Origin: Isurus oxyrinchus | Lineage: Eukaryota | Direction of reading: 5' to 3' | Length of the DNA: 64,000 bases | NCBI GenBank assembly: GCA_026770705.1 | Contig: JANJGN010000026.1 | Coordinates: forward strand, 36,084,001 to 36,148,000 | Shown: piece after piece, positions 680 to 60,599 of the stretch | Layout of the letters: every line of letters begins with the position of its first letter | Numbering within the stretch: the first letter of the stretch is position 1 | Translations under genes and position numbers: made by a program | Notes under the pieces: generated by a model | Database searches by the model: none | The model's input: the letters and a program-made list of their open reading frames with translations, nothing else | Told to the model about the DNA's origin: nothing

Positions 680-1065
680 GAGTGGAGATCAAGAATGTGG
701 GAGCCTGCTCCCAGTGCTGACGGTACAGTTGTATGAAATAGAAACCAGCAGTGGTCGCATAACTCAAATTAATGTTCACCGAGTCTCCTTCAAACTGTTG
801 CACTCTCTCCGGCTCCTGCAAAACAGAGTCTGCAGCATGAATACCTGCAGAAATTTAGAAATAGAAAGCTTTAACTTTTTATGAGAATTTTTTATCACCA
901 ATTGTTATTAAGTTAAAAGAATATATGCAAATACAGGGAAAAGGCAGTTAAAGGGAAGATTACTGTCTCAGTGTCACCATCAAGATGAAAATTGGGTAAC
1001 TTGTGAGTCTTACCAGTTAAGAGAGCTTCAGCTGCGAGGACTGATTAAAAAGTAACACCCATCAT
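680..1065 (-). pseudogene. TCR alpha/delta-like V pseudogene 'A' (leader 1065-1014, V exon from 844, 3' truncated)
   Basis: Leader ATGATGGGTGTTACTTTTTAA...TTAACTG|gtaag has an in-frame stop. Acceptor ctgcag| is followed by IHAADSVLQEPERVQQFEGDSVNINLSYATTAGFYFIQLYRQHWEQAPTFLI, which is TRAV/TRDV-like FR1-FR2 with the first Cys and the Trp lost. No FR3 or RSS found. Confidence 0.75.
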
Positions 1066-1129
1066 GTTCACTGAGCTGATGGTAGATTTGAACAAAATGT
1101 GTTTCACCAGAATTGTTTTAGTTGTTGAG

Positions 1130-1307
1130 TATTAGCCGGACCTCGCAGCCGATTTGTTCACCCCTGAAAAAGTTAACAGGTGAATGTGTATAGAATATGT
1201 CAACATTTGTGATTAAATATAACCCATGAAACACACACTGAGGATTTTAGCTCAGATTCACCGGGTAGCATGACCAGTATTATCAGTAAAGTACGCAAGG
1301 AACACGT
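1130..1307 (-). pseudogene. V-gene remnant 'B' (leader 1307-1262 plus first bases of a V exon)
   Basis: 46-nt phase-1 exon ACG(for ATG)-CSLRTLLIILVMLP-G|gtgaat. Acceptor tttttcag| at 1163. Upstream block 1390-1450 resembles 4925-4980 inverted. V body missing. Confidence 0.5.
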
Positions 1308-1489
1308 GGTTCCTGATTCGATAGTAAACAGCACGCTGTTTAAAATATGTGGACGCTCGGAGTCTTATGCCAATGGCACTTTTTTTTACCTTTTGGGGAA
1401 CTGAGGGGCGTTTCTCAGCCCTGCGATTGGCTGCTCTCTCAGATATGAAGTCAGCTCTAAACCATTCACTTGGATAAAAACAAACAAAA

Positions 1490-1605
1490 CTGGTTACATT
1501 TCCAGTTCTGTCGAAGGATCATGAGGACTCGAAACGTCAACTCTTTTCTTCTCCGCCGATGCTGCCAGACCTGCTGAGTTTTTCCAGGTAATTCTGTTTT
1601 TGTTC
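1490..1605 (+). mobile_element. Penelope-like element terminal fragment
   Basis: Near-identical to the ends of the GIY-YIG-encoding element at 25326-26710 (gaggactcgaaacgtcaactcttttcttctccgcc...acctgctgagtttttccaggtaattctg). Confidence 0.75.
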
Positions 1606-2226
1606 TAAACCATTCACTGTTGGTTCAGCGTAATATACAGTTGACACTGACCAATCACCTTCCACCGCTGGCTCTTTCTGCCTGTCTTTCTTGTTCCCTT
1701 GCTCTGTCTCACATAATCAATCATTCTGTCTCTTTCTCGCTTTAACTCGCTTTCTTTATAATTCAATGTCTCTATCTTTAGATAGATAGATCTTTCGCTC
1801 TCATTAAGTCATTGGGGATCATCTTGTACTGGTAAAGTGCCGAGTTTAGCCATTCACTATTTTTACCCCAGACACTCTGAAATGTGCTGAGCCTTAGGCC
1901 GCCTTTGAAACTAGGTCACTTTTGAAACTAGTCCCTGACAGATAGGCAGCAGGCCCAGAACCATTACAAATACAGATTGGTTCTGGTATTCACCCGGGGG
2001 CTCTACAGGTTTTCATTAAGCGGACAATGAGAAGTTTGAATTTGATCCTGGAGTTAACATGATCGTTGAATGTCACATTTCGCAACAATGACAAACATTG
2101 ACCTTAACGAGAGGAATCAACTCGAATTAGACTGCATTGTTGCAATTCATTCTCTGCACTGGTTCTCTGGGGTTGAACTCTTTGCGTTTTCTTAATATTT
2201 GAACCCTTGATTGTCGACCTGCACCC

Positions 2227-2705
2227 AGTTTCTGGATGAGACCCATGAGACACTCAGTCCCTGTGGGCCCCAGCGCGCAATAATGCACGGAGCTGTCTGT
2301 CATCTTCAGCTCTTTCATGAACAAGTGAAAAGTGCTTCCTGGCGGGTTGAGGTTCCCGTTGGAGTGTTTAAATCCAGAGCCGTATCGTTATACCCGTAAA
2401 TATCGGCTCTGATCAGATACTGAGGAGTTTGCTGTGGAACCTGGCGATATCAGAACAGGTTATGCTGTGTAGCTCAACTCGATACAGAGTAACTTGCAGG
2501 TTATTGCTGAACCTTCGCCCTCTCCTGCTTCGCAACATTGTTCTGGCTGGGAACCTGAGTCTCCAGTTCTCGTCTCTGAAAATAAACAGCGGCTACACAG
2601 CGGATTAGAAGGAGCATTAGAAAGAGAATTATCATCCGGAGATGGGAAATTGCACAAGGATCGCGTACTGGCCTGTGATCAGGAATATAACCATAGTCAG
2701 AGCAA
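2227..2705 (-). pseudogene. TCR alpha/delta-like V pseudogene 'C' with 23-RSS
   Basis: Acceptor tttattttcag| at 2575. Translation TRTGDSGSQPE...EGEGSAITCK / LF*YRQVPQQTPQYLIRAD / GSTFHLFMKELKMTDSSVHYCALGP, with frameshifts and Trp-to-stop. RSS CACAGGG (2265-2259), 23-nt spacer, CCAGAAACT (2235-2227). Leader remnant ends at 2673. Confidence 0.85.
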
Positions 2706-3889: not shown

Positions 3890-4140
3890 ATGAAACTCTG
3901 CCTGGCTTTGGTTATCGTCTCGATCACTAGTCGGTGATATTGGGCACTTCCTATAATTTTCTCCCATCTTTGTATAATTTCCCAATTCCATCTCTGGGAG
4001 ATTCGTCTCTTTCTGTCACTTCACCTAACCTGCTGTGTGTCCGTTGTTTATTTTCAGAGATGAGTGATGGAGATTCATTGCCTGAGAAAGAACAAGAAAT
4101 CGGATCAGAAGATTCCCCGGGAATTTACACAGAAAAATGA
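3890..4140 (+). pseudogene. Truncated TCR-like V gene C' (leader 3890-3929, V exon from 4058)
   Basis: Leader MKLCLALVIVSIT-A|gtcggt. Intron end and acceptor (ccgttgtttattttcag|AGATGAGTGATGGAGATTCA) are homologous to those of gene C on the - strand. Similarity is lost after about 10 codons. Confidence 0.65.
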
Positions 4141-5088: not shown

Positions 5089-5502
5089 ATGCGTTCACCA
5101 TGTTCCTCACTGGTAGCAATGTGGTACCTGGTGAGTCTATGTTTAGGTGATCAGTTTTTGAAATATTCTTTATTTTGCCGCAACGAGTGACTAAGATTCA
5201 GAATCTCAGGGTTCACCTTCATGCTTAACATTGCATGAAGAAAAGATCCTGATACGAAGCTGCAGTTACTCCACGTCCCATGGCATTCACTATCTCCACT
5301 GGGATGTCCTGGAGCTCCGAGATATTTACTGGGGAAATACAGGCTGGCGCAAGAGGCTAAGCCTCCAGATCTCCCAGAGCGGTTTTCTGCTGATTTGGAA
5401 AAATACAAGAAAACTATTCCCTTGACTGTCTCTGTCTCTGCCGTGTGTCACATGGACTGAATGCCACACTGTTACAGAGGCACAGTTAGGCCATAAAAAA
5501 CC
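5089..5502 (+). pseudogene. TCR alpha/delta-like V pseudogene B' with RSS
   Basis: Leader MRSPCSSLVAMWYL|gtgagt (5089-5130). Translation DSESQGSPSCLTLHEEKILIRSCSYSTSHGIHYLHW / PGAPRYLLGKY...PDLPERFSADLEKYKKTIPLTVS..SAV, with frameshift and deletions. RSS CACACTG (5465-5471), ~22-nt spacer, TAAAAAACC. Confidence 0.8.
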
Positions 5503-6037
5503 AACTTCTCTCACAGATCACTGTTAGCATCTGGATTGTTAACTGTTAATAGTGCTAAAGATTAATTTAGGATAGTGGCATATTTATGTGTTGCAGATCC
5601 TATATAATTCTATGTACTATTCCTCTCAATATCAGCTGTGGTTGATTCCCATGGTCAGTGGGCAGGTCTTTGAATGTGGCTCGCTGGCATTGGTACAAGA
5701 ACAGCATTAGTTCTTTCCCCTCACTGTCACCACCTCACACAATGACCCTATTAAAGAGCCAAAATTGGGTTCAGTCCTCGTCTCGGATCGTGTCATCTAC
5801 ACTGATTCGCTGCATCCTCTCTGACGTTATGAATTGGAGAACAAAGGATCTGTGAGTTGATTGGATGAATTGGAGAACAAAATACGGTGGAGCTTATTGG
5901 ACATCACTTGTTGCCTCGCTCAGGAATGAACCAATCGCTGGAGAGACCAGATCTGCATGAGCCCGTTCCCAACTCGAGACTGAAACAATTACAGATTCAG
6001 TCCGTTCTGTTTAAACCCACCATCAGCTCGTTGCAAA

Positions 6038-6362
6038 TATATTGGTTTTACTTTTTATCCATTTCTCACAGCTGTAGCTCTCTTACCCAGTAAGTCCACA
6101 AGTTGCACAACCTTCCTCTTGCATAGATCTTAAAGTTAATTTCACTGTTCTCTCTTTCAAGTTGCAGCATGTTCCGTCACCTGATTTTATTAGATAGAAT
6201 AAAATGATAATGCAATCTTAACGTTCTGCATCTCTAAATTCCCGCAGGTGTTGGTGGTACAAATTCAATCTCACAGGAGCCGGTTACAGCGCTGCAGTTG
6301 AAGGAGATTCGGTGATCATTACTTACAGCTATTTGACCACTGATGCCTCATATTCTATGCAG
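6038..6362 (+). pseudogene. TCR alpha/delta-like V pseudogene A', cut off by a LINE
   Basis: Leader ...GGTTTTACTTTTTATCCATTTCTCACAGCTGTAGCTCTCTTACCCA|gtaagt (ends 6089) is homologous to the gene A leader. Acceptor at 6248, then VGGTNSISQEPVTALQ/EGDSVIITYSYLTTDASYSMQ, then LINE sequence. Confidence 0.75.
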
Positions 6363-6364
6363 CC

Positions 6365-17650: not shown

Positions 17651-18129
17651 CTAATTGGTACAAAGTCTAATATTATAAACAGCAGCAGGGTCAGGTGTAG
17701 TGATAACTGGGAAAGGACCAATTGCAACACAAATAGAGATATGGAGGACGGCAGTAATAAATAAGGAAGGGCCCATTGTACTATTAATAATGACGGTCTC
17801 TAGTGCAACAGTAACTTAAGCAAAGCATAGTTTAGCATTTACAGTTACAAATGAGGGTGTGAAATACATTGAACCAGGTCTGTATAGGAATTATTAAAAC
17901 AGGGCCTTGATTGACATAAACTGAGGTAGGGTCTAGCGCAGTGATTACTGAAACAGGGCATGGTTTATTAACAACTGCGACAGGGCCTAGTGCAATGATA
18001 ATTGATACAGGGCTTGGATTGATGTAAACTGAGACAGGGCCCAGTGAAGTGATTACTTTCACAGGGCCGAGATTAATATCAACTGAGCAGGGACCAATAC
18101 AATGATTACTGATACAGGGTCTAAATTGA

Positions 18130-19420
18130 TGTAAAAGCAGAAAATGCTGGAAAACCACCACTAAATTCACTCAGCTCCTTCACCTGCTTCGTACCTGTTC
18201 TAATGAGGCCAAAACGATGCTTCTGACATGCCTTCCTACTTCCTTAAACAAGCTTCCCACCCACTGTGGTTGACAGGGCCCTCAACTGTGTCTGACCTAT
18301 CTCCCACGTCTCTGCTTTCACACATTCCTCTCTCTCACAGAATCATAATAGGGTCCCACTTGTTCTCTCGTTTCACCTCACCAGCCTCTGCATTCAAAGG
18401 ATCATCCTCCGCCATTTCTGCTAACTCCAGCATGGTGCCATCATCAATCACATCTTCCCCTCACCACCACACCCCTCACCACCACACCACCACCCACACC
18501 CCCGTAGGGGCCATTCCCTCTGGGACAGTCTGGTCCAGTCCTCCAACACCTCCAGCACCTCATCCCCTTCCCAAGGCATTTGCCCAAGCAATAAGAGAAG
18601 ATGCAACACTTGCCCATTTACCTCCTCCTTCCTGACTATCCAAGGGCCAAATATTCCTTGCAGGTGAAGAACCAATTCATTGCACCTCCTTCAATTTGGC
18701 CTCCTGCATTTGCTACTCCCAATGCGTTCTCCACTTCATCGGGGAGACCATACGCAGACTGGCAGATGGCTTTATGGAATACCTTCGGTCTGTCTGCAAG
18801 TATGACCTAGACCTTCCTGTCGCTTGCAATTTCAACACACCATCCTGCTCTCATACCCATATGTTCCTCTTTGACCTGCTGCAATGTTCCAGTGAAGCCC
18901 AATGCAAACTGGAGGAACAACACCTCATCTTCTGATTATGCACTTTACAGCCTTACTCATTTATTCATCCTTTTATCCCTTTTTTAATCCCCATTTCTAT
19001 TCCTTTTTGTACGGTTTTTCCCCAACCACCGCCTCGTTTCCCTACCACACCCCTAAAGGTGCCATCATTACTTGTTCCCTGTTGTTATTTCTCAGTGTGC
19101 TGATTCTGGTTCTGCTATTAACACATTCTGATTTCTTACCTTTATGATTCTATCAGCACCTACTTTAATCTTACCACTACCAGTGACACTCCCTTTTTCT
19201 TTTTCCCATGATATTTATCAGTCTCACCTTACCCCCACCTATTGCTTGCCTTCTATCCAGACTCACCTGCTCTACTGCGCTTAAACAACAAATGTCATCG
19301 CACTTTGAATTCTATTTCACTCTGAAGAAGAGTCAGATGGTCTCAAAAAGTTAGCTCTGCTTCTCTCACCACAGGTGAGATTTTCCAGCATTTCTTGCTT
19401 TTCTTTCAGATTTCCAGTGA
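18130..19420 (+). mobile_element. Penelope-like element with decayed GIY-YIG endonuclease
   Basis: CICYSQCVLHFIGETIRRLADGFMEYLRSV...VACNFN...KLEEQHLIF. Inverted ends gcagaaaatgctggaaaa / ttttccagcatttcttgc. Confidence 0.8.
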
Positions 19421-22400
19421 CTGCTGATACAGGGGTCTAGACTGAAACAAATTGAAGCAGGGCATACTGCAGAGATGACTGATACAGGGCCGAGATTAAT
19501 CTAAATTGAGACAGGGCCTAGTGCAGTGATTGCTGCAGGTCTAGCTGAATATAAGCTGAGACACAGCCTAGTGCATTCATGACAGACTCAGGACTTACAT
19601 TAATATAAACTGTGACAGGGCATGGTGCTGTGATTATTGATACAGGTTCAAGATCAGTATATACTGAGACAGTGCCCTTTACAGTGATAACTTTAAAAAG
19701 GGTCTTGATCAATATAACCTGAGTCAGTGCCCTTTGCAGTGATTACTGATACAGGGTATAGCTCAATGTAACTGACACATGGTCTAGTTCAGTGTTTACT
19801 GATGCATGGTCTCAATCAATATAAACTCAGGCAATGCCCAGTGCACTGATTACTGATTTAGGGCCGAGGTAAATATAAAATGAGACCGAGTCTAGTGCAG
19901 TGATTACGGATACAGGGTCCAGATCAATATAAACTGAGACAAGGTCTAGCACAGTCATTACTGATACAGGGTCTAGATTAATATAAACTGAGAGAGGGCC
20001 TAGTACAGTGATTAGTGAAAGATGGTCTGGACTAATATAAACTGAGGCAAGCCAGAGTGCAATGATAACTGATACAGGATTTAGAGCCTGCATCAGTAAT
20101 TACTGCACCAGGCCCTGTCGCAGTTTATATCATTCAAGATCCCATGTCAGTAATCACTACACTGAACACTGCCTCAGTTTATATTTACCTAGAGCCTGTA
20201 CCAGTAATCTCTGCACTGGACACGTTCTCAGTTTATATTAATCAAGACCCTGTATCAGTAATCAATGCAATAGATGCTGTCTCAATTGATATTGATCTAG
20301 ACCTGTATAAGTAATCATTGCTCTTGACCCTGTCTCAGTTTACATTAATCTTGGCCCCATATCAGTTATCTCTGCACTAGACTCTGTCCCACTTTATATT
20401 AGCTTAGCCCCTCAATCGGTAATCACTGCACTAGTTCCAGTCTGAGTTTATGCTAATCTAGTCCCTCCAGCAGTAATCACTGCAAGAGCTTCTGTCCCAG
20501 TTATATTTATCTAGGCCCTGTATCAGTGAACATTTCACCAGGGCATGTCTCAGTTTTTGTTGGTTCAGAAGCTGTTTCAGTAATCACTGCACTCAACCCT
20601 GTTACAGGATCTAGATTAATATAGAGTGAGACAGGATCTAGTGCTGTGTTTACTGATACATGGTCTCAATCAATATAAACTCAGACAATGTCCAGCGCCG
20701 TGATTATAGATACAAAGCTGAGATAAATATAAACTGAGACAGGGCCTACTGCCATGATTACTGACACAGAGCCTAGATTAATATAAACAGAGAGAGGCTC
20801 ATTTGCGGTGATTACTGATTTAGGGTTGAAATTGATATAAAATGATGCAGGGTCTAGTGCAGTGATTATTGATATAGGGTCTAAATTGATATAAAATTGT
20901 GCAGTGATTCCTGATAAAGGGTTGAAATTAATATGAACATGAGACAAGGCCAAGTGCAATGATTATTGTTACAGGGTCTAGATTGATATAAACTGAGACA
21001 GGGCCTAGTGCTGTGATTTGTGATGCAGGGTTGGATTGATATTAAATGAGACAGGGTCTTGTGCAGTTAATACTGACACAGGCTCTGAAATAATATAACC
21101 TGAGACAGGGCCATTGTCATGATTCGTGATGCAGGTTTGAGGTTAATATGAACTTAGAGAGGGCCTAGTGCAGTGATTACTGATAGAGGGACTAGATTGA
21201 TATAAATTGGGCAGGGCATAATGCAGTGATTACTGATACAGGCTTTAGATTAATATAAACTGAGAAATAGTCCAGTGCCATGCTTTTTGGTTCGGGGTGC
21301 AAATTGTTATAACCAGAACAGAGTCGAGTGCAGTGAATACTGAAACAGCTTCTGAACCAACAAAAACTGAGACATGCCCTGGTGAAATGTTCAGTGATAC
21401 AGGGCCTAGATAAATATAACTGGGACAGAAGCTCTTGCAGTGATTACTGCTGCAGGGACTAAATTAATATAAACTCAGACTGGACCTAGTGCAGTGATTA
21501 CTGATTGAGGGGCTAAGCTAATATAAAGTGGGACAGAGTCTAGTGCAGAGATAACTGATATGGGGCCAAGATTAATGTAAACTGAGACAGGGTCAAGAGC
21601 AATGATTACTTATACAGGCCTAGATCAATATCAATTGAGACAGCATCTATTGCATTGATTACTGATATAGGGTCTTGATTAATATAAACTGAGACTGTGT
21701 CCAGTGCAGAGATTACTGATACAGGCTTTAGGTAAATATAAACTGAGGCAGTGTCCAGTGTAGTGATTACTGACATGGGATCTTGATTGATATAAACTGC
21801 GACAGGGCCTGGTGCAGTAATTACTGATGCAGGCTCTAAATGAATATAAACTAAGGCAGAGTCTAGTGCAGTAATTACTGACAGTGGGCCTATTTCATAT
21901 CAACTGAGGCAGGGCCTAGTGCGGTGATTACTGATACAGTGCCTAGATTGATAAAAGCTGAGGAAGGGCAAAATAAAATATAAATTGATACTGAAAAAGG
22001 TCTAGATCAGTGTCAACTTAGACAGTGTCTAGTGCAATGACTACTGACACAGGATCTAGATGAATATAAACTGTGACAGGGTCTAGTGCATTGATTCCTG
22101 ATAGAGGGCCTAGGTTGATATAAAGTGAGGCTGGGCCTAGTGCAGTGATCACTGATACTGGATCTAGTCTAATATAAACTAGGGCAGGGGCTAGTGCAGT
22201 AAATAGTGATACAGGGTCTAGAATAATAAAACTTGTTGCAGGGCGAAGTCCAGTGAGTACTGTTACGGAGTCTGGGTTGATGTAAACTGAGACAGGGCCA
22301 TGTGTCGTGATTACTGATATAGGGTTTAGATTAATAGAAACAGATGCAGGATCTAGTGCAGTGATTACTGACAAAGGGTCCTGATTAATATAAACTGAGA

Positions 22401-29319: not shown

Positions 29320-30335
29320 AATCCGTGGAGGGAACTTTACTCTAAATCAGTTTTGAGTCTTCAATGACCTGGGAGTGCTTGATGGGAAACTGCAAATGAA
29401 AATTTACTCTGCGCCTAACCTGTGTTGTAGCCAGTAGCGAGGATTTGATGTGGCCGTGCCAAAGGATCTTTCCTTGTATCTAACCCGTGCTGTCCCTGCC
29501 TTTGCAGCGTCTGATGGGGCAGTGAGGAGGGAACTTAATTTTGCACTGTACCTGCACTGTACCTGTCCTAGGAGTATTTGATACGACTGTGTAGAGGGAG
29601 ATTTACTCTGTATCTAAACTGTGCTATACCTGACCTGGGAGTAATTGATAGGGCAGTTTAGAGGGAGCTTTACTCTGCATCTAAACTATGCTGTATTTGA
29701 CATGCCTGTGTTTGATGAGACAGTGTAGTCGGAAATTTGCCCCATATCTAAGCCCTGGGAATGCCTGATGTGACGGTGCATAGGCAGCTTTCCTCTTTCC
29801 CTGCCCCCAGTGTCGAGCTGCCTGGGAAATGTCTGATGGAACAGTGCAGAGGAAACTTTACACTGTTTAGTACCCTTACCCTATACACCTTGACTGTGTT
29901 TGAGCGGACAATGTAGAGGAAGTTTTACCCTGTATCTAAACTATGCTGTACCTGTCCTGGGAATGTTTGATGGCGACAGTGTAGAGGGAGTTTTACTCTG
30001 AATCTAACCCGTGCTATACCTGACTTGGAAGTTTTTCATCTGACGACATAGAGGGAGCTTTACATCATTAATCTTGCCCCATGCTACACCTGCAGCTGTT
30101 TGATGGAGCCGTGGGCCTTGTCTCTGCATTACACTAGGTCATGTCTTACCGTATCTAAACCGCCCTGTACCTGCCCTGGGAGTGTTTCATGGTGAGAGTT
30201 TCGAGGGAGTTTCACTCACTTTGACACGTGCTGTACCTTCCCTGGGAGTGTTCAATATGGCAATGTAGAGGGAACTTTAAATTTTGTGCCTGGCCCCATG
30301 CTGTACCTATCCTGGGAGTGCTTGATGGGACAGTA
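29320..30335 (+). repeat. ~65-bp tandem repeat
   Basis: Units like ctgtacctgccctgggagtgtttgatgggacagtgtagagggagctttactctgtatctaacccgtg. Single copies also at ~44390-44515 and 45125-45200. Confidence 0.85.
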
Positions 30336-30339
30336 GACC

Positions 30340-39269: not shown

Positions 39270-39450
39270 GTAAGATGGGGCGTGGATCCTGTCGCCGCCT
39301 CTACCAGGGAATCAACAGGCGGCGCCTGGAATCCCGCCCCCTTCTGCCGGGTATTTAAATGCCGCTCACTGGGACCGGAATCCAACAGTCCGGGAGCTGG
39401 TTTGTTCACTGAGTTCTGGACAGAACCATTTTCCCCAGATGACCAGAAGG
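39270..39450 (+). promoter_or_regulatory. VH promoter region
   Basis: TATA-like TATTTAAAT at ~39351, 100 bp before the ATG. GC boxes (gggcgtgg, cccgcccc). No perfect octamer nearby, as expected for shark VH. Confidence 0.6.
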
Positions 39451-39496
39451 ATGAGGCCGGCGATTTCTCTCAGTTTGTTGCTGACTTTCTTATCCC
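39451..39496 (+). CDS. IGHV: IgM VH leader exon
   Basis: MRPAISLSLLLTFLS-C|gtgagt, phase 1. An in-frame upstream ATG lies at 39439. Confidence 0.95.
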
Positions 39497-39622
39497 GTGA
39501 GTAGTTTTTATTGTCCAAGTCTCTCACTGTTACTGTCTGTGTTAGTCTCTCTCTAGAATGTTACAGAGTCAGGAATCATTTCACCAGGGTTAATCTTCGG
39601 GGTTTTTGATATATTTTTACAG

Positions 39623-39928
39623 GTGTCCAGTCGGATGTTGTGTTGACTCAGCCAGAGGCAGAGACCGGGCGTCCCGGAGGCACCCTGAGACTGACCTGTA
39701 AAACCAGCGGCTTCGATCTTGACAGCTCCTACATGAACTGGGTCCGACAGGTTCCCGGACAAGGGCTGGAATGGCTGGTTTACTACGGTGATTCATCGGA
39801 CAACAGCTATGCCCCAGCAATTAAGAATCGATTTACGGCGTCCAAAGACACTTCAAGGAGCATCTTCTCCTTGGACATGACGAACTTGAAGATTGAAGAC
39901 ACCGCCATCTATTACTGTGCCAGAGAGT
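39623..39928 (+). CDS. IGHV: IgM VH exon, intact
   Basis: [52 protein letters not shown]...[33 protein letters not shown]. Both Cys and the Trp are present. Typical shark mu VH. Confidence 0.98.
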
Positions 39929-39967
39929 CACAGCGAAAGGAACCAGGGCTGGACCCGAACAAGAACA
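39929..39967 (+). other. VH 23-RSS
   Basis: CACAGCG, 23-nt spacer, ACAAGAACA. Confidence 0.95.
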
Positions 39968-40335: not shown

Positions 40336-40415
40336 AGTTTTTGTGCGTCTGTATTTCACTGTGATACTACAGTGGGTCACAGTGCTGTGCACAGCGACAT
40401 CCTCATACAAAAACC
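40336..40415 (+). other. IGHD: D1 segment (coding 40364-40377) with 12-RSS and 22-RSS
   Basis: AGTTTTTGT-12-CACTGTG [ATACTACAGTGGGT] CACAGTG-22-ACAAAAACC. Open in all three frames (ILQW, YYSG, TTVG). Confidence 0.96.
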
Positions 40416-40717: not shown

Positions 40718-40799
40718 AGTATTTGACATGGTGTGTCTCACTGTGATAACTGGGATGGCCCACAGTGTTACATTCCCTGGGCTGTGCCATACAATAACT
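40718..40799 (+). other. IGHD: D2 segment (coding 40746-40760) with 12-RSS and 23-RSS
   Basis: AGTATTTGA-12-CACTGTG [ATAACTGGGATGGCC] CACAGTG-23-ACAATAACT. No nonamer at 12-nt spacing on the 3' side. Confidence 0.92.
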
Positions 40800-41127: not shown

Positions 41128-41155
41128 GGTTTTTGTATTGACAGTAACTGCTGTG
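41128..41155 (+). other. 12-spacer RSS in front of JH
   Basis: GGTTTTTGT, ATTGACAGTAAC (12 nt), TGCTGTG. Confidence 0.88.
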
Positions 41156-41205
41156 GATCGCTACGGACTACTGGGGACAAGGGACCATGGTGACGGTGAC
41201 TGCAG
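41156..41205 (+). CDS. IGHJ: JH segment (possibly a germline-joined D-J)
   Basis: IATDYWGQGTMVTVTA-G|gtaag. WGxG motif and phase-1 donor. Confidence 0.96.
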
Positions 41206-46812: not shown

Positions 46813-47021
46813 NNNNNNNNNNNNNNNNNNNNNNNNNNNNNNNNNNNNNNNNNNNNNNNNNNNNNNNNNNNNNNNNNNNNNNNNNNNNNNNNNNNNNNNN
46901 NNNNNNNNNNNNNNNNNNNNNNNNNNNNNNNNNNNNNNNNNNNNNNNNNNNNNNNNNNNNNNNNNNNNNNNNNNNNNNNNNNNNNNNNNNNNNNNNNNNN
47001 NNNNNNNNNNNNNNNNNNNNN
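46813..47021. other. Assembly gap (N run)
   Basis: 209 N. Confidence 1.
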
Positions 47022-48639: not shown

Positions 48640-51600
48640 GAGAGCCTGGGGGAAAGGGCAGGCAGGTGGGGGGAAGGAAAGAGAGTCGGGGAAAAGGGTA
48701 GCGATCCAGTGGAAAGTGCATATAGATGAGGCAAAGGAATGGGAAGAGCCGGGGGAAGGGCAGGCACCCGTGGAATAAGTGCAGAGAGCTATGGGAGAAA
48801 GGGTAGAGAGGCGGGAGGGGGAAAGGGCAGGGCGGCAGAGATGGGAAAGGGCAGAGAGGCGGGAGGGGGAAAGGGCAGAGAGAGGAGAGGGGGCAAGGTC
48901 AGAGTGGGGGTATGGGCAAGGGCAGAGAGGGGGGAGTGGGCAAGGGCAGAGAGTGGGGAGTGGGCAAGGGCAGAGAGACGAGAGGGGGGAAAGGGCAGAG
49001 AGGCGGAGGGGGGAAGGGCAGAGCAGCGGAGGGGGAAAGAGCAGAGAGGCAGGAGGGGGAAAGGGCAGAGAGGCGGGAGAGGGAAAGGGCAGTGAGGGGA
49101 CAAAATGGTTAATGAACAAGGGAAAAAGTCAGTGAGCCGGACAAAAGCACAGAGTCGTGGAGTAAATGCAGAGAGCTGGGGGAGAAAGGACAGAGAGGTG
49201 GGAGGGGGAAAGCGTAGAGAGGAGGCGGGCAAAGGGCAGAGAGGCGGGACGTGGAAAGGGCAGAGAGGCGGGACGTGGAAAGGGCAGAGAGGCGGGACGT
49301 GGAAAGGGCAGAGAGGCAGGAGGGGGAAAGGGCAGAGAGGCGGGAGGTGGAAAGGGCAGAAAGGCAGGAGGGGGAAAGGGCAGAGAGGCGGGAGGTGGAA
49401 AGGGCAGAGAGGTGGGAGGTGGAAAGGGCAGAGAGGCGGGAGGGGGAAAGGGCAGAGAGGCGGGAGGGGGAAAGGGCAGAGAGGCGGGAGGGGGAAAGGG
49501 CAGAGAGGCAACAGAAAGGTTAATGAACTGGGGAAAAAGTCAGAGAGCCAGACAAAAGCGCAGAGAGCTGTGGAGTAAATGGAGAGAGCCGGGGGAGAAA
49601 GGGCAGAGAGGTGGAGGGCGGAAAGGGCAAAGAGGCGGGGGGGTAAAGGGCAGAGATGGGGCAGGGGGAAGGGACAGAGAGGTGGGAGGTGGAAAGGGTT
49701 GAGAGGCAGGAGGGAGAAAGGACAATAGAGGCGGGAGGGGGAAAGGGCATAGAGGCGGGAGGGGGAAAGGGCAGAGAGGCGGGAGAGGGAAAGGGCAGAG
49801 AGGCAGGAGGGGGAAAGGGCAGAGAGGCAGGAGGGGCAAAGGGCAGAGAGGCGGGAGGGGGAGAGGGCAGAGAGGCGGGAGGGGGAGAGGGCAGAGAGGC
49901 GGGAGGGGGAGAGGGCAGAGAGGCGGGAGGGAGAAAGGGCAGAGAGGCGGGAGAGGGAAAGGGCAGAGAGGGGGGGAAGGACAGAGAGGAGGGAGGGGGA
50001 AAGGGAAGAGAGGCGGGAGAGGTAAAGGGCAGAGAGGCAGGAGAGGGAAAGGGCAGAGAGGGGGGAGAGGGAAAGGGCAGAGAGGCAGGAGGGGGAGAGG
50101 GCAGAGAGGTGGGAGAGGAAAAGGGCAGAGAGGCGGGAGAGGAAAAGGGCAGAGAGGCGGGAGAGGAAAAGGGCAGAGAGGCGGGAGGGGAAAAGGGCAG
50201 AGAGGCAGGAGGGGGAAAGGGCAGAGAGACAGGAGGGGGAAAGGGCAGAGAGACAGGAGGGGGAAAGGGCAGAGAGGCGGGAGGGGGAAAGGGCAGAGAG
50301 GCAACAGAAAGGTTAATGAACTGGGGAAAATGTCAAAGAGCCAGATGAAAGCGCAGAGAGCCGTGGAGTAATGCAGAGAGCCGGGGGAGAAAGGACAGAG
50401 AGGCGGGATGGGGAAAGGGCAGAGAGACGGAGGGGGGAAAGGGCAGAGATGGGGGGAAGGACAGAGAGGAGGGAGGGGGAAAGGGCAGAGAGGCAGAGGG
50501 GGGAAAGGGCAGAGATGGGGGCAAGGGCAGAGAGGCGGGAGTGGGCAAGGGCAGAGAGGTGGGAGTTGGAAAGGGCAGAGAGTTGACAGAAAGGTTAACG
50601 AACTGGGGAAAAAGTCAGAGAGCCGGCTGAAAGCGTAGAGAGCCGTGGAATAAATGCAGATAGCCGGGGGAGAAAGGGCAGTGAGGCGGGAGGGGGGATA
50701 GGGCAGAGAGGCAGGAGGGGGAAAGGACAGAGAGGCAGGAAGTGGAAAGAGCAGAGAGGCAGGTGGGGGAAAGGGCAGGGAGGCAGTAGGGAAAGGGCAG
50801 AGAGGCGGGAGGGGGAAAGGGCAGGGAGGCAGTGGGGAAAGGGCAGGGAGGCGGGAGGGGGAAAGGGCAGGGAGGTGGGAGGGAGAAAGGGCCGAGAGGC
50901 GGGGGGGAAAGGGCAGAGAGGCGGAAAGGGCAGAGAGACAGGAGGGGGACAGGGCAGAGAAGTGGGTTGGAATGAAGGGCAGAGAAGTGAGGGGTGCAGG
51001 AAGGGCAGAGAGACAATGGAAAAGGCAGAGAGATGGGCGAAAGGTCAGCGAGCCGGGGGAAAGGTCAAAGGGTCAGGCAAAAGTGCAGAGGGCCTTGGGC
51101 TAAGTGCAGAGAGCTGGGGGAGAAAGGGCAGAGAGGCAGGAGGGTGACAGGACACACAAGCAGGGAATGAAGGACAGTGAGGTGATGGAAAGGTCAGTGA
51201 GCCGGGGAAAAGGTCAGAGAGCCAGGCAAAAACACAGAGAACACTGGAGTAAATGCAGAGAGGCAGGGGAGAAAGGACAGAGAGGCGGGAGGGGTAAAGG
51301 GCAGAGAGGCAGGGGAGAAAGGGCAGAGAGGCGGGAGGTGGAAAGGGCAGAGAATTGGGGGGTTGGAAGGGCAGAGGGAAGGGGGGAATGGGCAGAGGGG
51401 AGGGGTGAAATGTCAGAGAGGAGGTGGAGAAAGGGTAGAGAGGAGGGGGAAAGGGCAGAGAGATGGGGGAAAGGTCAGAGAGCCGGGCGAAAGTGCAGAC
51501 AATCTTGAACTAAGTGCAGAAAGCTGGGGGAGAAAGGGCAGAGAGGCGGAGGGGGGAAAGGACAGAGAGGCAGGAGGGCAACAGGGCCGACAGGCGGAGG

Positions 51601-52010
51601 ATGAAGGGCAGTGAGGTGACGGAAAGGTCAGCAAACTGGGGAAAATGTCAGAGCCAGGCGAAAACACAGAGAACCATGGTGTAAATGCAGAGAGCTGGGG
51701 GAGAAAGGACAGAGAGGCGGGAGGGGGAAAAGGCAGAGAGGCGGGAGGTGGAAAGGGCAGCGAGGCGGGCGAAAGGGCAGGGAATCTTGGATTAAGTGCA
51801 GAGATCTGAGGGAGAAAGGGCAGAGAGGCAGGAGGGGTAAAGGGCAGAGAAGCGGGGGTAAAGGGCATACAGGCGTGTGGGAAAGGGCTGAGAGGCAGGG
51901 GGAAGGGCAGAGAGGCTGGGGACAGGGCAGAAGGCGAGGTTGCAGCGGGCAGAGAGGCGGCAAAAGTGCAGAGTCGGGCTATAGCGGGGAGAGCAGGGCG
52001 AAAGCAGTTG
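48640..52010 (+). repeat. G-rich, purine-biased ~24-bp tandem repeat in the JH-Cmu intron
   Basis: Unit AAGGGCAGAGAGGCGGGAGGGGGA. A higher-order spacer (aaggttaatgaactggggaaaa...gcagagagc) recurs at ~49105, 49515, 50307 and 50590. Confidence 0.95.
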
Positions 52011-54559: not shown

Positions 54560-54859
54560 CGACACCGTCTTCGCCCACTCTCTACAAACTGGTCTCCTCC
54601 TGTCAGCAACACAACACTGACGGCTCCATAACTTACGGCTGTTTAGTGATGGACTACTCCCCAGAAATCACCAGCCTGACCTGGAAGAAAGATGGGCAGC
54701 AGATTACCACTGGATTTAAGACATACCCGTCGGTGAGAAACCAGAAGGGAACCTACACCCTGAGCAGCCAGTTAACCATCACCGAATCAGAGGGAGAATG
54801 CAGCAAAATCAAGTGTGAAGTTCAACACAGCGGCTCAGACAAGAGCATTGAATGGCAAT
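54560..54859 (+). CDS. IGHM: IgM Cmu1 exon
   Basis: cccag|(A)[45 protein letters not shown]...YTLSSQLTI...[16 protein letters not shown]|gtaagt. 300 nt, phase 1/1. Confidence 0.96.
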
Positions 54860-55076
54860 GTAAGTGTTGGGGAACCTGTGAGAAACAGAAAGGCTGTGAT
54901 TGACCTGTATAGGGCCTTGGTTATAACGCATTTATAGTGCTCTGCATAGTTCTGATCCCTGGAAAATCCAGGTTAGTGTCCACTGACGGCAAAGAGCCTG
55001 TTAAAATATAAGAACTCATTGTTTCTGTTATCAATTTCTTCTGCAAGAAATGGCTAACCTGTGTTTTTTTTTTCAG

Positions 55077-55376
55077 GCCCTCCAACTGTTCTCCTCACCG
55101 TGAGTTCCCGGGAAGAAATCAGAACCAACAAATTTGCAATCGCCGTCTGTTCAATCATCGATCTCCGTTCAAAGTCAATCACCGTGAAGTGGCTGAAGAA
55201 TGGACAACCCATGAATTCAGGAATTGTCACCTCTCCTGTCTTTGAAGTGAACGGGAAATTCTCGGCAACCAGTCGGCTGAAAGTCTCCGCTGGGGAATGG
55301 TTCACCGACGCTGTCTATACCTGTCAGGTCACTCACCAAGGGGTCACCCAAAGTCGAAACGCCACCAAGTGTGAGG
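55077..55376 (+). CDS. IGHM: IgM Cmu2 exon
   Basis: ttcag|[10 protein letters not shown]...[21 protein letters not shown]...[14 protein letters not shown]...KCE-G|gtaag. 300 nt. Confidence 0.96.
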
Positions 55377-56000
55377 GTAAGAAATACAAACCGAGGAAGC
55401 AACAGATCATTCTGCTCTGCGATGTTAATCAAATCAGGAATTTATTGGAGTTAGTAAAAAGCACGGAACAACGTCTAATTTACTTTCATGTAGTTATTGT
55501 TTAATTCCGATGTAAATGCTGCATGTGGATTGTTCACCATTCAGGATTTTATCACATCACTTCTCTACATTGGCGTCACAGAGTGATTGAGGTGAACTTG
55601 ATATCAGCTTTACCCTGAGTCAGCTGATCATATTTCGAAAGGCAGAAGATGTCTGGAACCCCTCACTGGTAACAGCTTCGGGATAGAGTGTTGGAAAGTG
55701 CATCCACCCTATTTATAAAATGGCTTTCAGTCCTGCATTCCAGGGCCCAGGAATGATACATTTGTATTGGGACTGGGGTACAACAGATTCGTGAGAATGT
55801 TACCGGGGTTGAAGGACTTAAATTATGAGAACGATTTACACAGACCAAGCTGCTTTTCCATTGTGTAAAGAAAATTAAAGATGATAGTTAGGTGTTGATA
55901 TGTCCAAGGTGATTTATTTTCCTTCAGGGAGTGAAGGCCGAATACTGCTGTCCTGCTCCTGAAGGTGAAACTTTGATTGATCTTCATTTCTGTCTCACAG

Positions 56001-56312
56001 ATGATTCCCACTGCCCCAACGATCCCACAATTACTCTACTGCCACCTCCAATAGAACAGGTCTTACTGGAGGCGACCGTGTCCTTAACCTGCATCATTTC
56101 TAATGCTCCTTATGGAGTCCTCGTGTCCTGGACACAAGAGAAGAAGCCTTTGAAATCAGAGATCGCCGTCCAACCGGGAGAGGATCCCAACAGCGTGGTC
56201 AGCAACGTAAACATCTCGACACAAGCCTGGCTGAGTGGGGTTGAGTTCAACTGTGTGGTGAGCCATCAGGATCTGCAGACTCCTTTAAGAAATTCCATCC
56301 ACAAGGAACAAG
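56001..56312 (+). CDS. IGHM: IgM Cmu3 exon
   Basis: cacag|[44 protein letters not shown]...[29 protein letters not shown]|gtaag. 312 nt. Confidence 0.96.
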
Positions 56313-56689
56313 GTAAGCGGTGAAATTGAAGCAATAAGTAGTTCAATGTGTCTATTTCCAGTGTAAGTGTAAGGATCAATATTTACTATTCAGTCTAATC
56401 TAATTAGCAATTTCGCCAACGAAACGCCCTGGGCCTGTGGACTTTCAGGGGGAAATTGATAAGTAGATGAATGAAAAATGAATTGAAGGCTGTGCCATTG
56501 AGTTTAGATGAAGTAAGATGGGAGGAGCCTAGTGCGAAGCTGAAACATGGACCAGTTGGGCAGAATGGCCTGTTTCTGTGCTGTAAACTTTGAGAAACTT
56601 TCTCGTCCAACCCCATAAGTTCTCAGGGAAAAGGATTGTGCCACCTCTGCTCCGAGCTGGAAAGCCGGACAAATTCAAAGTATTTTATT

Positions 56690-56885
56690 TCTTAATTCAT
56701 GGATGTGGGCGTCACTGGCTGAGCCAGCGTTTATTGCCCATCCCTAATTGCCCTTGACAAGGTGGTGGTGAGCTGCCTTCTTGAATCGCTGCAGTCGATG
56801 TGGTGTAGATACACCCACAGTGCTGTTAAGGAGGGAGTTCCAGGATTTTGATTCAGCTATAGTGAAGGATCGGTGATATATTTCT
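56690..56885 (-). mobile_element. LINE/SINE 3' tail in the Cmu3-Cmu4 intron
   Basis: ggatgtgggcgtcactggctgagccagcgtttattgcccatccctaattgccc..., same as 44530-44700. Confidence 0.75.
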
Positions 56886-57008
56886 GAGAAGTGGATAATG
56901 AAACCCCTTAATATTCATCACAAAACACGTTTCTCTCACATCTAACCAGCGGTTTCATTGTCTATGAAAGTATCCAGTTTATTGACATTTATTGTACATT
57001 TTCTGCAG

Positions 57009-57400
57009 TTAAAGACCCGCGGGAACCGACCGTGTCTGTCCTCCTGCCCTCGGCAGAAGATGTCTCCGCTCAGAGATTCGTCTCCCTCAGCTGCTTAGTG
57101 ACAGGTTTCTCCCCGCGAGAGATTTTCGTCAAGTGGACCGTCAATGACAAGCCAGTGAATCCCGGGAACTACAAGAACACCGAGGTGGTGGCGGAGAACG
57201 GCAATCGCTCCTTCTTCATGTACAGCCTGTTATCCATTGCAGCGGAGGAGTGGGCCAGCGGCGCTTCTTACTCCTGTGTGGTGGGACATGAAGTGATCCC
57301 CTTGAAGATCATCAACAGAACGGTTGATAAATCCAGCGGTAAACCAAGCTTTGTGAATATTTCCCTTGCACTGATGGACTCTGTTAATTCATGTCAATGA
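57009..57400 (+). CDS. IGHM: IgM Cmu4 exon with secretory tailpiece
   Basis: [43 protein letters not shown]...YSCVVGHE...VDKSS|[20 protein letters not shown]. Internal donor G|GTAAA after 57338. NIS sequon and penultimate Cys present. Confidence 0.98.
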
Positions 57401-57819: not shown

Positions 57820-58230
57820 CCAACAATCCCCCATCAGGGAGAGGGGGAAGGGAAATTATTAACCCACTGTACCCCCTCTTCCCCAACAGAGAGAGGGGGA
57901 AGGGGACATTGTTCACCCACTGCACCTCCACTTCCACAACAGCGGGTGGGGGGGGGGGCGAATTGTTTAGCCACTTTACCCCACTTTCCCAACTGAGAGA
58001 GGGGAAGGGAAATTGGTAACCCACAGTACCCCACTTTCCCAACAGAGAGAGGGGAAGGGAAATTGGTAACCCACTGTGCCTCCACTTCCCCAACAGAGAA
58101 AACTGAAAGGAAAATTTTAAGCTGCTTTTACCTCCACTTGCTAAACAGAGAGACGAGGAAGGTCATTGGTTAACCCAGTGTGTCTCCACCTTCTCAGCAG
58201 AGAGAACCGAAAGGGAAATTGCTTAGACAA
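57820..58230. repeat. Degenerate ~50-bp tandem repeat
   Basis: aacccactgtaccccactttcccaacagagagaggggaagggaaattggt units. Confidence 0.7.
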
Positions 58231-58699
58231 CCAGACAGAGCAAAACTATTAGCTCCCTGGACCCTCACCGAGCAGAGAATCTGGAAGGGAACGGGTCTCT
58301 ACTGTCATGACTCAGTTACCAACAGTCCATGTCGGCTTCCAGCTTACTGGCCACAGATTTTAAACTCCCATCATGCTTAGGATGTTGTAAAAACATCTAT
58401 TTATGCAACATAATTTGAAGATCTTTTAACACCCTTGTTCCTGTTAAGCTTATGCTAAGATTGGTTTCCCATAATCCGAATCTAAACTGGTGATTGAATC
58501 CTCCCTGAGTTGTTCAAGGTTCTGTCCCTGAATTTTATGAGGCACATGGTTGATTGTTTGCATTCGTTCACCTGATATCACCTTGCATCTCACAAAAAGC
58601 ACGTTTATACACAGAACATTGAAACTATTCACTACAATTTTCACCATCAAGGTCAGACTCGATCATTGGTACTGGTAAAATTCTGGAAAATAGTAAAAA

Positions 58700-59780
58700 T
58701 ACACACAGCTGACACAAATGGACAGACACAAACACGCGTACGCACACACATAGGCACAGACATGCAGACACAAACAAACACAGGTACAGGCAGACACATT
58801 TACACCCACACATGTGCACCCACACAAACACAGGCAGACACAGGCAGACACACATAGACAAATACACACACACATGCACACATGCGCGCACAATCACAAC
58901 CACATGGGTGCAGACGCATAAACATACACGTACACAGAATCACACACATAAACAAATACACACACACAATCACACACATGTAGAAATACACACACACACA
59001 TGAACACAATCACACACACACAAACAGATAAAACCAGACAAGCAGACTCATACAAAGACACAAAGCACAAATGTAACTATTAGCATATGCAGTATTACAC
59101 GTTCACAATGACATAAATACAGACATAAAGACACACACTATCGTACACATTAAAACAAATGCATGGACACAAATTAACAGTTGCACACATATGAGCAGAC
59201 AACACTCAGACACAAAGACACAGAGGAACAGACGAACACATTCACAGACACACATGTAGAAACAAACATGAATATACTCATACACAGTAGAAAACAAAAA
59301 ACACACGTTAGTTCATATGAAAACACATACACACATTGATACATAGTTCTAAATATCGATCAACACACAAATGCACATATTAAAAACTCTCTCTCTCTCT
59401 CTCTCTCTCGCTGTATCACACAATCACACAGACGCTGTGACACAGACATTAATATGCTGACAGACACGTGGAACAAATAAAGAAACAATAACACTCATAT
59501 TAGCAGGCACACATTAAACAGGTAAATACACATTAACACAGATAGTAATAAGTAAATATAGACATCAAGACATAAACACACACAATAACATACTCATACA
59601 TCCACATTGGCAGAAAAACAAAATATACGTAAAGATGCAGACACAAAAATACACAAATCAGCACTCATTGGCACATGAACACACACATTAACACACATGT
59701 ACACATATGGACACACAAACAACCAGTAATGCAAAGCGCGGGATACTCATGCAGACACATACAAAAGCTAAAGCACAACG
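58700..59780. repeat. CA-rich low-complexity tract
   Basis: Seen directly. Confidence 0.85.
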
Positions 59781-60322
59781 CAAACGCCAGGCTATTGAAG
59801 AAAGAATAATTCAAACGTTCATTTTTAACGGCATATCCTCCGGCAATTGTCTCTATTACATCACAACTCGATAAACACACTGAAACAATGCTCTTACTGA
59901 GAAACTGATTTAAGTTAATGATGCACCAAACATTTCCATCACAAATAAACAAACCAGATGGGAAATCACATCCGAGCTTTTAAAAAGCAACACGCATAGT
60001 TTCCAAAAAGTAGCTCAGTGAATCTCTCCCTATACCTATCATAATATTCTCCAATAATAGATCGTACGAAATTGTTCGAAACTAACTGATACTGGAGAAA
60101 AGTTGCCATATTTTGCGACATGGACTGTACAAAGATTGTAAAGGAAGAACAGCTGTGGAGATAGTTACAGAGATGGGTTACTGAGCGTCACGAACTTAAT
60201 AGGAGATATATATTGAACATTGAATACATTAATAACTTAGGAAACAGTAAAGGAGATGTTTAAAAATGATATCCTAGATTAATAAACAATCTAATTATAT
60301 TTCCTCGGCTATATCCCCGTAG

Positions 60323-60450
60323 ATTCCACAGACCGCATCTGGATTGAAGACTCTGAGGATGATAACGGCAACATCTGGACAACCGCTTCTACATTCATCA
60401 TCCTATTCTTCCTGAGCATTTTCTACAGCGCTGCCGTCACTCTGGCGAAG
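60323..60450 (+). CDS. IGHM: IgM transmembrane exon TM1
   Basis: cgtag|(D)STDRIWIEDSEDDNGNIWTTASTFIILFFLSIFYSAAVTLAK|gtgaga. CART motif. Absent from the ORF track. Confidence 0.96.
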
Positions 60451-60590
60451 GTGAGAAGATTCAATCCACTCACACTTCAAACTGACAGAAGCGGTTTGAA
60501 AAAAATCTCTCAATGTTTCATTGATTAAAACTCTAACATAAATGTTCTAGATCATAACAATCTGCTTCATTATTTCATCTTCTTTTACAG

Positions 60591-60599
60591 ATCAAGTGA
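60591..60599 (+). CDS. IGHM: IgM TM2 exon (IK-stop)
   Basis: ttttacag|ATC AAG TGA gives the cytoplasmic tail KIK. Confidence 0.9.
   Translation: MK

What the first reader, a model, noticed from the sequence alone, without database searches (positions are those of the whole stretch)
680..60599. Intact IgM gene physically linked to TCR alpha/delta-like V genes
Seen: TRAV/TRDV-like pseudogenes (WYRQ-type FR2, YCALGP end, 22/23-RSS) lie ~33-39 kb upstream of a complete V-D-D-J-Cmu-TM cluster, with no N gap between them. Established: sharks make IgHV-TCR delta chimeric rearrangements, and Ig-like V segments occur in their TCR alpha/delta locus. Inference: this may be a full, functional IgM inside or at the edge of a TRA/D region. 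Its VH (and 23-RSS Ds) could donate to TCR delta in cis. Intact TCR Vs outside the window could join the 12-RSS D or J here, giving TCR-V/Cmu chains. Together with the TRD-type RSS layout, this is the best candidate for an undescribed hybrid Ig/TCR system in the window.
Basis: partly seen in the sequence, partly recalled or inferred. Interest (0 to 1): 0.85.

Follow-up and report, generated by a model that had tools for sequence, protein, structure and literature searches.

The report
Shark IgM cluster beside dead TCR V genes
An ordinary, intact-looking shark IgM antibody gene cluster lies 33-38 kb from a few dead T-cell-receptor-type V gene relics. This mixing of antibody and T-cell-receptor genes in sharks was published in 2025, and nothing here shows a new hybrid receptor.

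Summary
On the + strand lies a canonical shark IgM minilocus: leader, VH, D1, D2, JH, Cmu1-4 with secretory tail, TM1 and TM2 (39439-60599). Every exon is open, and splice phases and RSSs are correct.

Four V relics and one stub lie 33-38 kb upstream (645-6360). They sit on both strands as a mirror-image block, not only on one strand.
- Two relics belong to a V family that a nurse shark TCR delta cDNA uses.
- The other two are TCR-like but cannot be placed.
- All are dead: stops, frameshifts, truncation, or a retroelement insertion.
- The window holds no TCR D, J or C segment.

The only N gap (46813-47021) lies in the 13.4-kb JH-Cmu intron, so reading frame is not at stake. Continuity across it has only circumstantial support.

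The "TRD-type" RSS layout is, from my own knowledge, the normal shark IgH layout. Flajnik et al. 2025 (PMC12227049) already reported IgM, IgW and IgNAR clusters linked to TCR alpha/delta, with TCR-type V exons between the IgH clusters. Use of IgM and IgW V segments by TCR delta is also published.

This scan has noted the same layout at several other places in this genome.

Verdict: real, ordinary, already known. A hybrid Ig/TCR system is not supported.

The parts
645..1065 (-). V-B relic. Leader 1065-1014 with an in-frame TAA at codon 7; V exon 844 to about 645, truncated after CDR2 with no FR3 and no RSS. Belongs to a V family used by TCR delta.
   Evidence: PDB: the top 35 hits are all labelled TCR alpha. 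HMMER E 3.3e-16. Clade with P0007, P0008, P0010 at 93/96 support.
2227..2575 (-). V-A relic. V exon 2575-2266 with LF*YRQ in FR2 and an HYCALG(P) end, at least 3 frameshifts and 2 stops. 23-RSS at 2265-2227 (CACAGGG / CCAGAAACT).
   Evidence: tblastn E 2e-5. PDB cannot separate VH from TCR alpha. Unplaced long branch in the tree.
3983..4077 (+). V-A' stub. Mirror copy of the V-A intron end plus about the first 20 nt of its exon.
   Evidence: blastn: 74% identity over 97 nt to 2556-2652, opposite strand.
5100..5502 (+). V-C' relic. Leader 5100-5130; V exon about 5188-5464, frameshifted and lacking YYC. 22-RSS at 5465-5502 (CACACTG / TAAAAAACC). Same orientation as the IgM cluster.
   Evidence: tblastn E 7e-4. 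No significant PDB hit.
6037..6360 (+). V-D relic, a paralogue of V-B. The leader has lost its ATG; V exon 6247 to about 6360 is frameshifted and cut by a retroelement that runs from about 6345 to 8900.
   Evidence: blastn: 67% identity over 357 nt to 746-1097, opposite strand.. RVT_1 E 7.3e-5, below Pfam's cut-off, at 8027-8701.
17890..31670 (.). 54-bp (27-bp sub-unit) satellite arrays in both orientations, interrupted by retroelement pieces. Gap-free in the assembly, but a possible place for a misjoin.
39439..39967 (+). IgM leader 39439-39496, intron, VH exon 39623-39928 and 23-RSS 39929-39967. TATA-like box at 39352.
   Evidence: The leader-V splice 39496>39623 appears in contigs of two probable RNA runs.
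40336..40415 (+). D1: 9mer-12-7mer, coding 40364-40377, 7mer-22-9mer.
40718..40799 (+). D2: 9mer-12-7mer, coding 40746-40760, 7mer-23-9mer.
41128..41205 (+). JH: GGTTTTTGT-12-TGCTGTG, coding 41156-41205 (..DYWGQGTMVTVTA), GT donor at 41206.
   Evidence: A contig of run X23 covers 41165-41205.
46813..47021 (.). Assembly gap inside the JH-Cmu1 intron (41206-54559; 13,354 nt including the estimated Ns).
48777..51958 (+). G-rich 24-bp tandem array (about 140 copies) in the JH-Cmu intron.
54560..57400 (+). Cmu1 54560-54859, Cmu2 55077-55376, Cmu3 56001-56312, Cmu4 plus secretory tail 57009-57400. Internal membrane-form donor after 57338. AATAAA at 57428 and 57438.
60323..60599 (+). TM1 60323-60450 and TM2 60591-60599 (IK*). 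AATAAA at 61014 and 61050.

Best explanation
This is one ordinary copy of the multi-copy shark IgM heavy-chain minilocus. It sits in the elasmobranch antigen-receptor complex, where IgH clusters are interspersed with TCR alpha/delta material.

How the cluster works (inferred from its anatomy and from published shark biology):
- A promoter about 90 nt before the leader drives transcription.
- RAG joins VH(23) to (12)D1(22), then to (12)D2(23), then to (12)JH, all within the 1.8-kb segment block.
- JH splices to Cmu1-4.
- Use of the Cmu4 tail or of the internal donor to TM1-TM2 gives secreted or membrane IgM.

The V segments 33-38 kb upstream are non-functional relics of TCR alpha/delta-type V genes. 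They were reshaped by an inverted duplication, deletions and a retroelement insertion. They take no part in the IgM gene.
For: Shown here:
- All IgM exons are open, in phase 1, with AG/GT splice sites.
- Pfam finds V-set in VH and C1-set in each of the four Cmu exons. VH matches antibody heavy-chain V domains in PDB.
- RSS geometry obeys the 12/23 rule. RSS-like sites are 8 in the window against 1.0 expected from shuffles. Five of the eight belong to the IgM segments and one to V-C'.
- The leader-V splice is present in contigs of two probable RNA runs of the same organism. Those contigs begin 34-46 nt after a TATA-like box.
- DNA word depth over V is about 30 times that of the flank, so the family has many copies.
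- Every V relic carries stops, frameshifts or a truncation.
- V-B and V-D cluster at 93/96 support with a nurse shark cDNA (P0007). That cDNA carries the same constant region as a NAR-TCR clone (P0040), so it is a TCR delta chain.
- Peptide motifs encoded by the published nurse shark delta-V primers match the sister clones P0035, P0037 and P0039.

Published:
- Rearrangement stays within a minilocus (PMC2435157).
Against: - The contigs laid on the cluster differ from the window at 39438 and 39457 in every run. They therefore come from paralogues or a collapsed consensus, and expression of this exact copy is not shown.
- Continuity across the N gap between JH and Cmu1 is not proven.
- The JH-Cmu intron is 13.4 kb, about twice the 6.3-6.8 kb reported for nurse shark.
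- V-A and V-C' could not be placed among V classes.
- No labelled TRBV, TRGV or IgL reference sequences were available.
Confidence: 0.8

Rival explanations
1. Hybrid Ig/TCR system: TCR-type V segments with a 23-RSS join the 12-RSS of D1, D2 or JH of this cluster and give TCR-V/Cmu chains.
For: - The RSS spacers would allow it under the 12/23 rule.
- V-C' (22-RSS at 5465) lies in the same orientation, 34.8 kb before the D1 12-RSS.
- Unchecked scan notes report intact TCR-type Vs about 40 kb from other IgM clusters.
Against: - All TCR-type Vs in this window are dead.
- In nurse shark, 97 partial rearrangements stayed within the minilocus, with one possible exception (PMC2435157).
- None of the papers read reports a TCR V on an Ig constant region.
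Confidence: 0.03
2. This cluster's VH (or its Ds) is a donor for TCR delta chains by long-range or trans rearrangement. That is the already known shark Ig-V/TCR-delta chimerism.
For: - Use of IgM and IgW V segments with TCR delta D-J-C is published and is ascribed to proximity (PMC12227049; PMC5931798).
- Most IgH loci are partly rearranged in shark thymocytes. This is from my recollection of the PMC2435157 abstract; the passage was cut off, so it was not verified here.
- The VH has an intact 23-RSS.
Against: - There is no TCR D, J or C in the window.
- The nearest TCR delta region in the scan's unchecked notes is about 3 Mb away.
- No reads were available to test it.
Confidence: 0.15
3. Assembly artefact: a misjoin in the 54-bp satellite (17.9-31.7 kb) or at the N gap puts unrelated pieces side by side. 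The linkage, or the completeness of the cluster, would then be false.
For: - Long inverted satellite arrays and a multi-copy gene family are typical sites of misassembly.
- The gap sits in low-complexity DNA next to a retroelement tail.
- Unchecked scan notes report constant-less V-D-J cassettes in this genome.
Against: - There is no N in 1-46812.
- Order, orientation and spacing of V-D-D-J and Cmu fit one cluster.
- The same G-poor CA/CT-type tract lies left of the gap (45.75-46.81 kb) and resumes for about 70 nt right after the retroelement tail (about 47.37-47.45 kb).
- The same layout, TCR V relics about 40 kb from an IgM cluster, is reported elsewhere in this genome and in four published species.
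Confidence: 0.1

Closest known systems
Shark IgM heavy-chain minilocus (VH-D1-D2-JH-Cmu), as described in horned shark and nurse shark (PMC2435157)
   Same: - One split-leader VH, two Ds and one JH within 2 kb, about 400 nt apart.
- Four Cmu exons, a secretory tail, TM1 and TM2.
- Rearrangement signals laid out as V23 / 12-D-22/23 / 12-D-23 / 12-J.
   Different: - The JH-Cmu intron is 13.4 kb, against 6.3-6.8 kb in nurse shark. It is inflated by retroelement pieces, a CA/CT-rich tract and a 3.1-kb G-rich tandem array.
- It contains an assembly gap.
Elasmobranch antigen-receptor complex (AgRC) of Flajnik et al. 2025, Sci Adv (PMC12227049)
   Same: An IgM minicluster with TCR alpha/delta-type V exons nearby. 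The paper states that such V exons lie between IgH clusters, and that some V domains are intermediate between TCR and Ig.
   Different: - Only one 64-kb slice is seen here.
- Linkage to TRAC, TRDC and PSMB5 could not be tested.
- The relics here are all dead and form a mirror-image block.
Ig-V/TCR-delta chimeras, TAILV and VH-delta segments, and NAR-TCR in sharks
   Same: Ig-type and TCR-type V segments lie close together. The VH carries a 23-RSS that is compatible with the 12-RSS of a TCR delta D segment.
   Different: - In those cases an Ig-type V sits in, or is recruited to, the TCR delta locus and is expressed with C-delta.
- Here a complete IgM gene has its own constant region and the TCR-type Vs are dead.
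- No chimeric transcript was shown.

Membership tests
Shark IgM heavy-chain minilocus | A single VH with a split leader and a 3' 23-RSS | tested here: met
Shark IgM heavy-chain minilocus | Two D segments, each with a 5' 12-RSS and a 3' 22/23-RSS, and one JH with a 12-RSS, all within about 2 kb | tested here: met
   (spacings 435, 368 and 395 nt).
Shark IgM heavy-chain minilocus | Four C1-set Cmu exons, a secretory tail with a penultimate Cys, an internal donor, TM1 and TM2, all open and in phase | tested here: met
Shark IgM heavy-chain minilocus | JH and Cmu1 contiguous in one transcription unit | tested here: inconclusive
   The N gap 46813-47021 lies in the intron. Support is only circumstantial, from the flanking repeats.
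Shark IgM heavy-chain minilocus | Rearranged and expressed | tested here: inconclusive
   The leader-V splice is seen in contigs of two probable RNA runs, but these contigs differ from this copy at 39438 and 39457.
TCR alpha/delta V gene segments | V-set exon with a split leader, WYRQ-type FR2, a ..YYCA/G.. end and a 23-RSS | tested here: met
   - V-A: LF*YRQ, HYCALG and a 23-RSS.
- V-C': 22-RSS.
- V-B and V-D: leader plus the front of the V exon only.

TCR alpha/delta V gene segments | Closest relatives are used with a TCR alpha or delta constant region | tested here: met
   - Met for V-B and V-D only: clade with the TCR delta cDNA P0007, and the top 35 PDB hits of V-B are labelled TCR alpha.
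- Inconclusive for V-A and V-C'.
TCR alpha/delta V gene segments | An open reading frame able to make a V domain | tested here: not met
   All relics have stops, frameshifts or a truncation.
Elasmobranch AgRC (IgH clusters linked to TCR alpha/delta) | An IgH cluster and TCR alpha/delta-type V exons on one contiguous sequence | tested here: met
   There is no N between 645 and 46812. The assembly across the satellite was not checked independently.
Elasmobranch AgRC (IgH clusters linked to TCR alpha/delta) | The same chromosome carries TRAC, TRDC and PSMB5 | not testable with these tools
   Only unchecked scan notes place TCR delta/NAR-TCR about 3 Mb away on the same piece.
Functional Ig/TCR hybrid receptor gene (TAILV, VH-delta or NAR-TCR type) | A chimeric transcript or an in-frame chimeric gene structure | not tested
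   - No TCR D, J or C lies in the window.

The most novel reading that the evidence does not exclude
The block [quoted passage not shown] may be a recurring duplication unit of this genome. The scan's notes report 40, 41 and 45 kb spacings at other sites. IgM clusters would then have multiplied inside the TCR alpha/delta V array. In copies that keep intact, same-orientation TCR Vs with a 23-RSS, those Vs might occasionally join the IgM D1 12-RSS and give TCR-V/Cmu chains.
Probability: 0.05. Interest if true: 0.7.

Novelty: already known. Interest (0 to 1): 0.2.

Why it matters
The close linkage of antibody and TCR alpha/delta genes in sharks bears on three things: how the two receptor systems arose from one locus, how the translocon IgH locus formed, and why sharks make Ig-V/TCR-delta chimeras. 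That point was made in 2025. This window adds one well-annotated example. It has exact coordinates, a mirror-image block of dead TCR Vs, and a family-level link of two relics to a TCR delta V family that lacks the canonical Cys23 and Trp41. It does not add a new mechanism.

Tried and rejected
- The search for homologous proteins with V-B found nothing. With P0008 it found only itself. With P0007 it gave unnamed clones.
- Cluster names were uninformative.
- PDB ranking could not class V-A (VH about equal to TCR alpha) or V-C' (nothing significant). For whole P0007 it mixed lambda light chains with TCR delta and alpha, probably because of the J region.
- The tree left V-A and V-C' as unplaced long branches. 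It had no labelled TRBV, TRGV or IgL rows.
- A weak V-like tblastn hit at 14636-14713 (E 0.007) was taken as chance.
- Four papers were not held: Criscitiello 2010, Zhu 2012, Deiss 2019, and the supplement of PMC12227049.
Reads were laid on 38801-44800.
- The spliced IgM protein was checked exon by exon. The joined model was not built or searched.
- Complex prediction and structure prediction were not used, because no binding or fold claim is made.
Full report
**Layout of the window.** Stop-to-stop ORFs, Pfam and direct reading give this picture:
- V-like relics at 0.6-6.4 kb.
- Retroelement debris at 6.3-9 kb.
- 54-bp satellite arrays in both orientations at 17.9-28.1 kb and 30.4-31.7 kb.
- An IgM cluster on the + strand from 39.4 to 60.6 kb.
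- A single N run, 46813-47021.

**The IgM cluster.**
- The leader is 39439-39496 and the VH exon is 39623-39928. The intron between them is GT..AG, 126 nt.
- VH matches Pfam V-set (E 8.5e-18). As a control, it matches antibody heavy-chain V domains in PDB.
- The signals are:
  - VH: CACAGCG-23-ACAAGAACA.
  - D1 (coding 40364-40377): 5' AGTTTTTGT-12-CACTGTG and 3' CACAGTG-22-ACAAAAACC.
  - D2 (coding 40746-40760): 5' AGTATTTGA-12-CACTGTG and 3' CACAGTG-23-ACAATAACT.
  - JH (coding 41156-41205, ..DYWGQGTMVTVTA): GGTTTTTGT-12-TGCTGTG.

- A simple RSS scan found 8 sites in the window against 1.0 expected from shuffles. Five belong to these segments and one to V-C'.
- Segment spacings are 435, 368 and 395 nt. 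Nurse shark miniloci are described as "about 400 bp apart" (PMC2435157).
- Cmu1-4 (54560-54859, 55077-55376, 56001-56312, 57009-57400) are all C1-set. They are open, in phase 1, and bounded by AG and GT.
- Cmu4 ends in a secretory tail, [20 protein letters not shown], and has the internal donor AGCG|GTAAAC after 57338.
- TM1 (60323-60450) and TM2 (60591-60599, IK*) follow. Poly-A signals lie after both ends.
- The exons were checked one by one. I did not build or search a joined protein.

**The gap.**
- It lies in the JH-Cmu1 intron (41206-54559; 13,354 nt with the estimated Ns). It is 5.6 kb after JH and 7.5 kb before Cmu1, so reading frame is not at stake.
- The left flank (45.75-46.81 kb) is a G-poor CA/CT tract.
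- The right flank (47023-47360) reads as a retroelement 3' tail. About 70 nt of the same CA/CT-type sequence resumes after it.
- This fits an element inserted into one tract, but it is only circumstantial.

**Reads.**
- Runs of one organism hold about 40% of the sampled words of 39300-41300.
- On 38801-44800, contigs of two probable RNA runs (X19, X23) show the leader-V splice 39496>39623. They begin at 39386 and 39398, which is 34-46 nt after a TATTTAA at 39352.
- DNA word depth over V is about 30 times the flank, so this is a multi-copy family.
- At 39438 and 39457 every contig, DNA or RNA, differs from the window. The evidence is therefore for the family and not for this copy.
- DNA contigs also show fused or inverted D-J intervals. 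These presumably come from paralogous clusters.

**The V relics.** tblastn with 32 V-set proteins found only four relics plus the VH.
- V-B (minus strand) has an in-frame TAA in its leader and stops after CDR2. Its first 35 PDB hits are all labelled TCR alpha (best E 3.6e-5). A full HMMER search gave E 3.3e-16.
- The nearest intact relatives of V-B are two bamboo shark V genes, P0008 and P0010 (47-51% identity). Their gene models read through into an RSS.
- A third relative is the cDNA P0007. Its J and constant-region start equal those of the clones P0033-P0040.
- P0040 is a NAR-TCR chain, so that constant region is TCR delta.
- Peptide motifs encoded by published nurse shark delta-V primers match these clones: VTQLFS matches P0037, QSWSEIT and ITYLQL match P0035, and ESWLTQ and LSISEL match P0039 (PMC5931798).
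- V-D (plus strand) is a mirror paralogue of V-B (67% over 357 nt). It has lost its ATG and is cut by a retroelement. The evidence for the retroelement is an RVT_1 match of E 7.3e-5, below Pfam's cut-off.
- In a maximum-likelihood tree V-B and V-D join P0007, P0008 and P0010 at 93/96 support.
- Leu at the Cys23 and Trp41 columns of V-B is a family trait, not decay (alignment A1).
- V-A (minus strand) has LF*YRQ, HYCALG(P) and a 23-RSS, with at least three frameshifts. PDB cannot separate VH from TCR alpha for its FR3, and it is a long unplaced branch.
- V-C' (plus strand) has a 22-RSS. It is frameshifted and lacks YYC, and its class is unresolved.
- A stub, V-A', mirrors the start of V-A.

The block is thus an inverted duplication. 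Two relics (V-C', V-D) and the V-A' stub face the IgM cluster, and V-A and V-B face away. The window holds no TCR D, J or C.

**Comparison with what is known.**
- Flajnik et al. [quoted passage not shown]
- That paper states that TCR alpha/delta-type V exons lie between IgH clusters and that some Vs are intermediate. It uses the proximity to explain rearrangements of IgM and IgW V segments onto TCR delta (PMC12227049).
- Malecek et al. 2008 found that rearrangement stays within a minilocus (PMC2435157).
- The V23 / 12-D-23 / 12-J signal layout is, from my own knowledge of the classic horned shark descriptions, the normal shark IgH layout.
- Unchecked notes of this scan report the same pattern at several other sites of this genome. 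They also report TCR delta/NAR-TCR and Ig remnants 0.7-3 Mb away on the same piece.

**Verdict.** The linkage is expected and published. The hybrid-system inference has no support in this window.

**Tool and procedure notes.**

Noticed in passing
window 645-844 (-) and 6247-6360 (+); proteins P0007, P0008, P0010: The V family of relics V-B and V-D lacks the canonical Cys23 (Y/F/F/L) and Trp41 (L/L/V/L) in its intact members too. One of these is an in-frame nurse shark TCR delta cDNA. This V domain would therefore have no intradomain disulfide.
   Followed up: partly
window 48777-51958 (+): About 140 copies of a G-rich 24-bp unit (GGGGGAAAGGGCAGAGAGGCGGGA; G 50-58% on the coding strand) lie in the JH-Cmu intron. 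This looks like a switch region, yet a review states that cartilaginous fish lack switch regions (PMC4279169). It is also a separate first-stage note (s1-871283).
   Followed up: partly
window 40303-41166: Contigs of DNA runs join 40363 to 41165 with 21 other letters between, and 40303 to 41166. Opposite-strand joints link 40761 with 41159. These are probably paralogous clusters with germline-fused or inverted D-J intervals.
   Followed up: no
window 39887-40005 joined to 40804-40761: One contig of the probable RNA run X23 joins the VH 3' flank, past its RSS, to the inverted D2 3' RSS. This is unexplained. It could be a paralogue or an inversional product.
   Followed up: no
window 476-584 and 5820-5935: A CCAAT-rich piece found upstream of the V-D leader recurs in direct orientation just beyond the truncated end of V-B. 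This marks a rearrangement breakpoint in the mirror-image V block.
   Followed up: partly
window 17890-28073 and 30367-31670: 54-bp (27-bp sub-unit) satellite arrays lie in both orientations. A 104-nt element flanking them is repeated at 1503, 17544, 25323 and 26575. ORF fragments with a YIGET motif (18.6-18.9, 25.7-26.3 and 63.5-63.96 kb) suggest Penelope-like elements, but Pfam gave no hit for the one fragment tested (25748-26287).
   Followed up: partly
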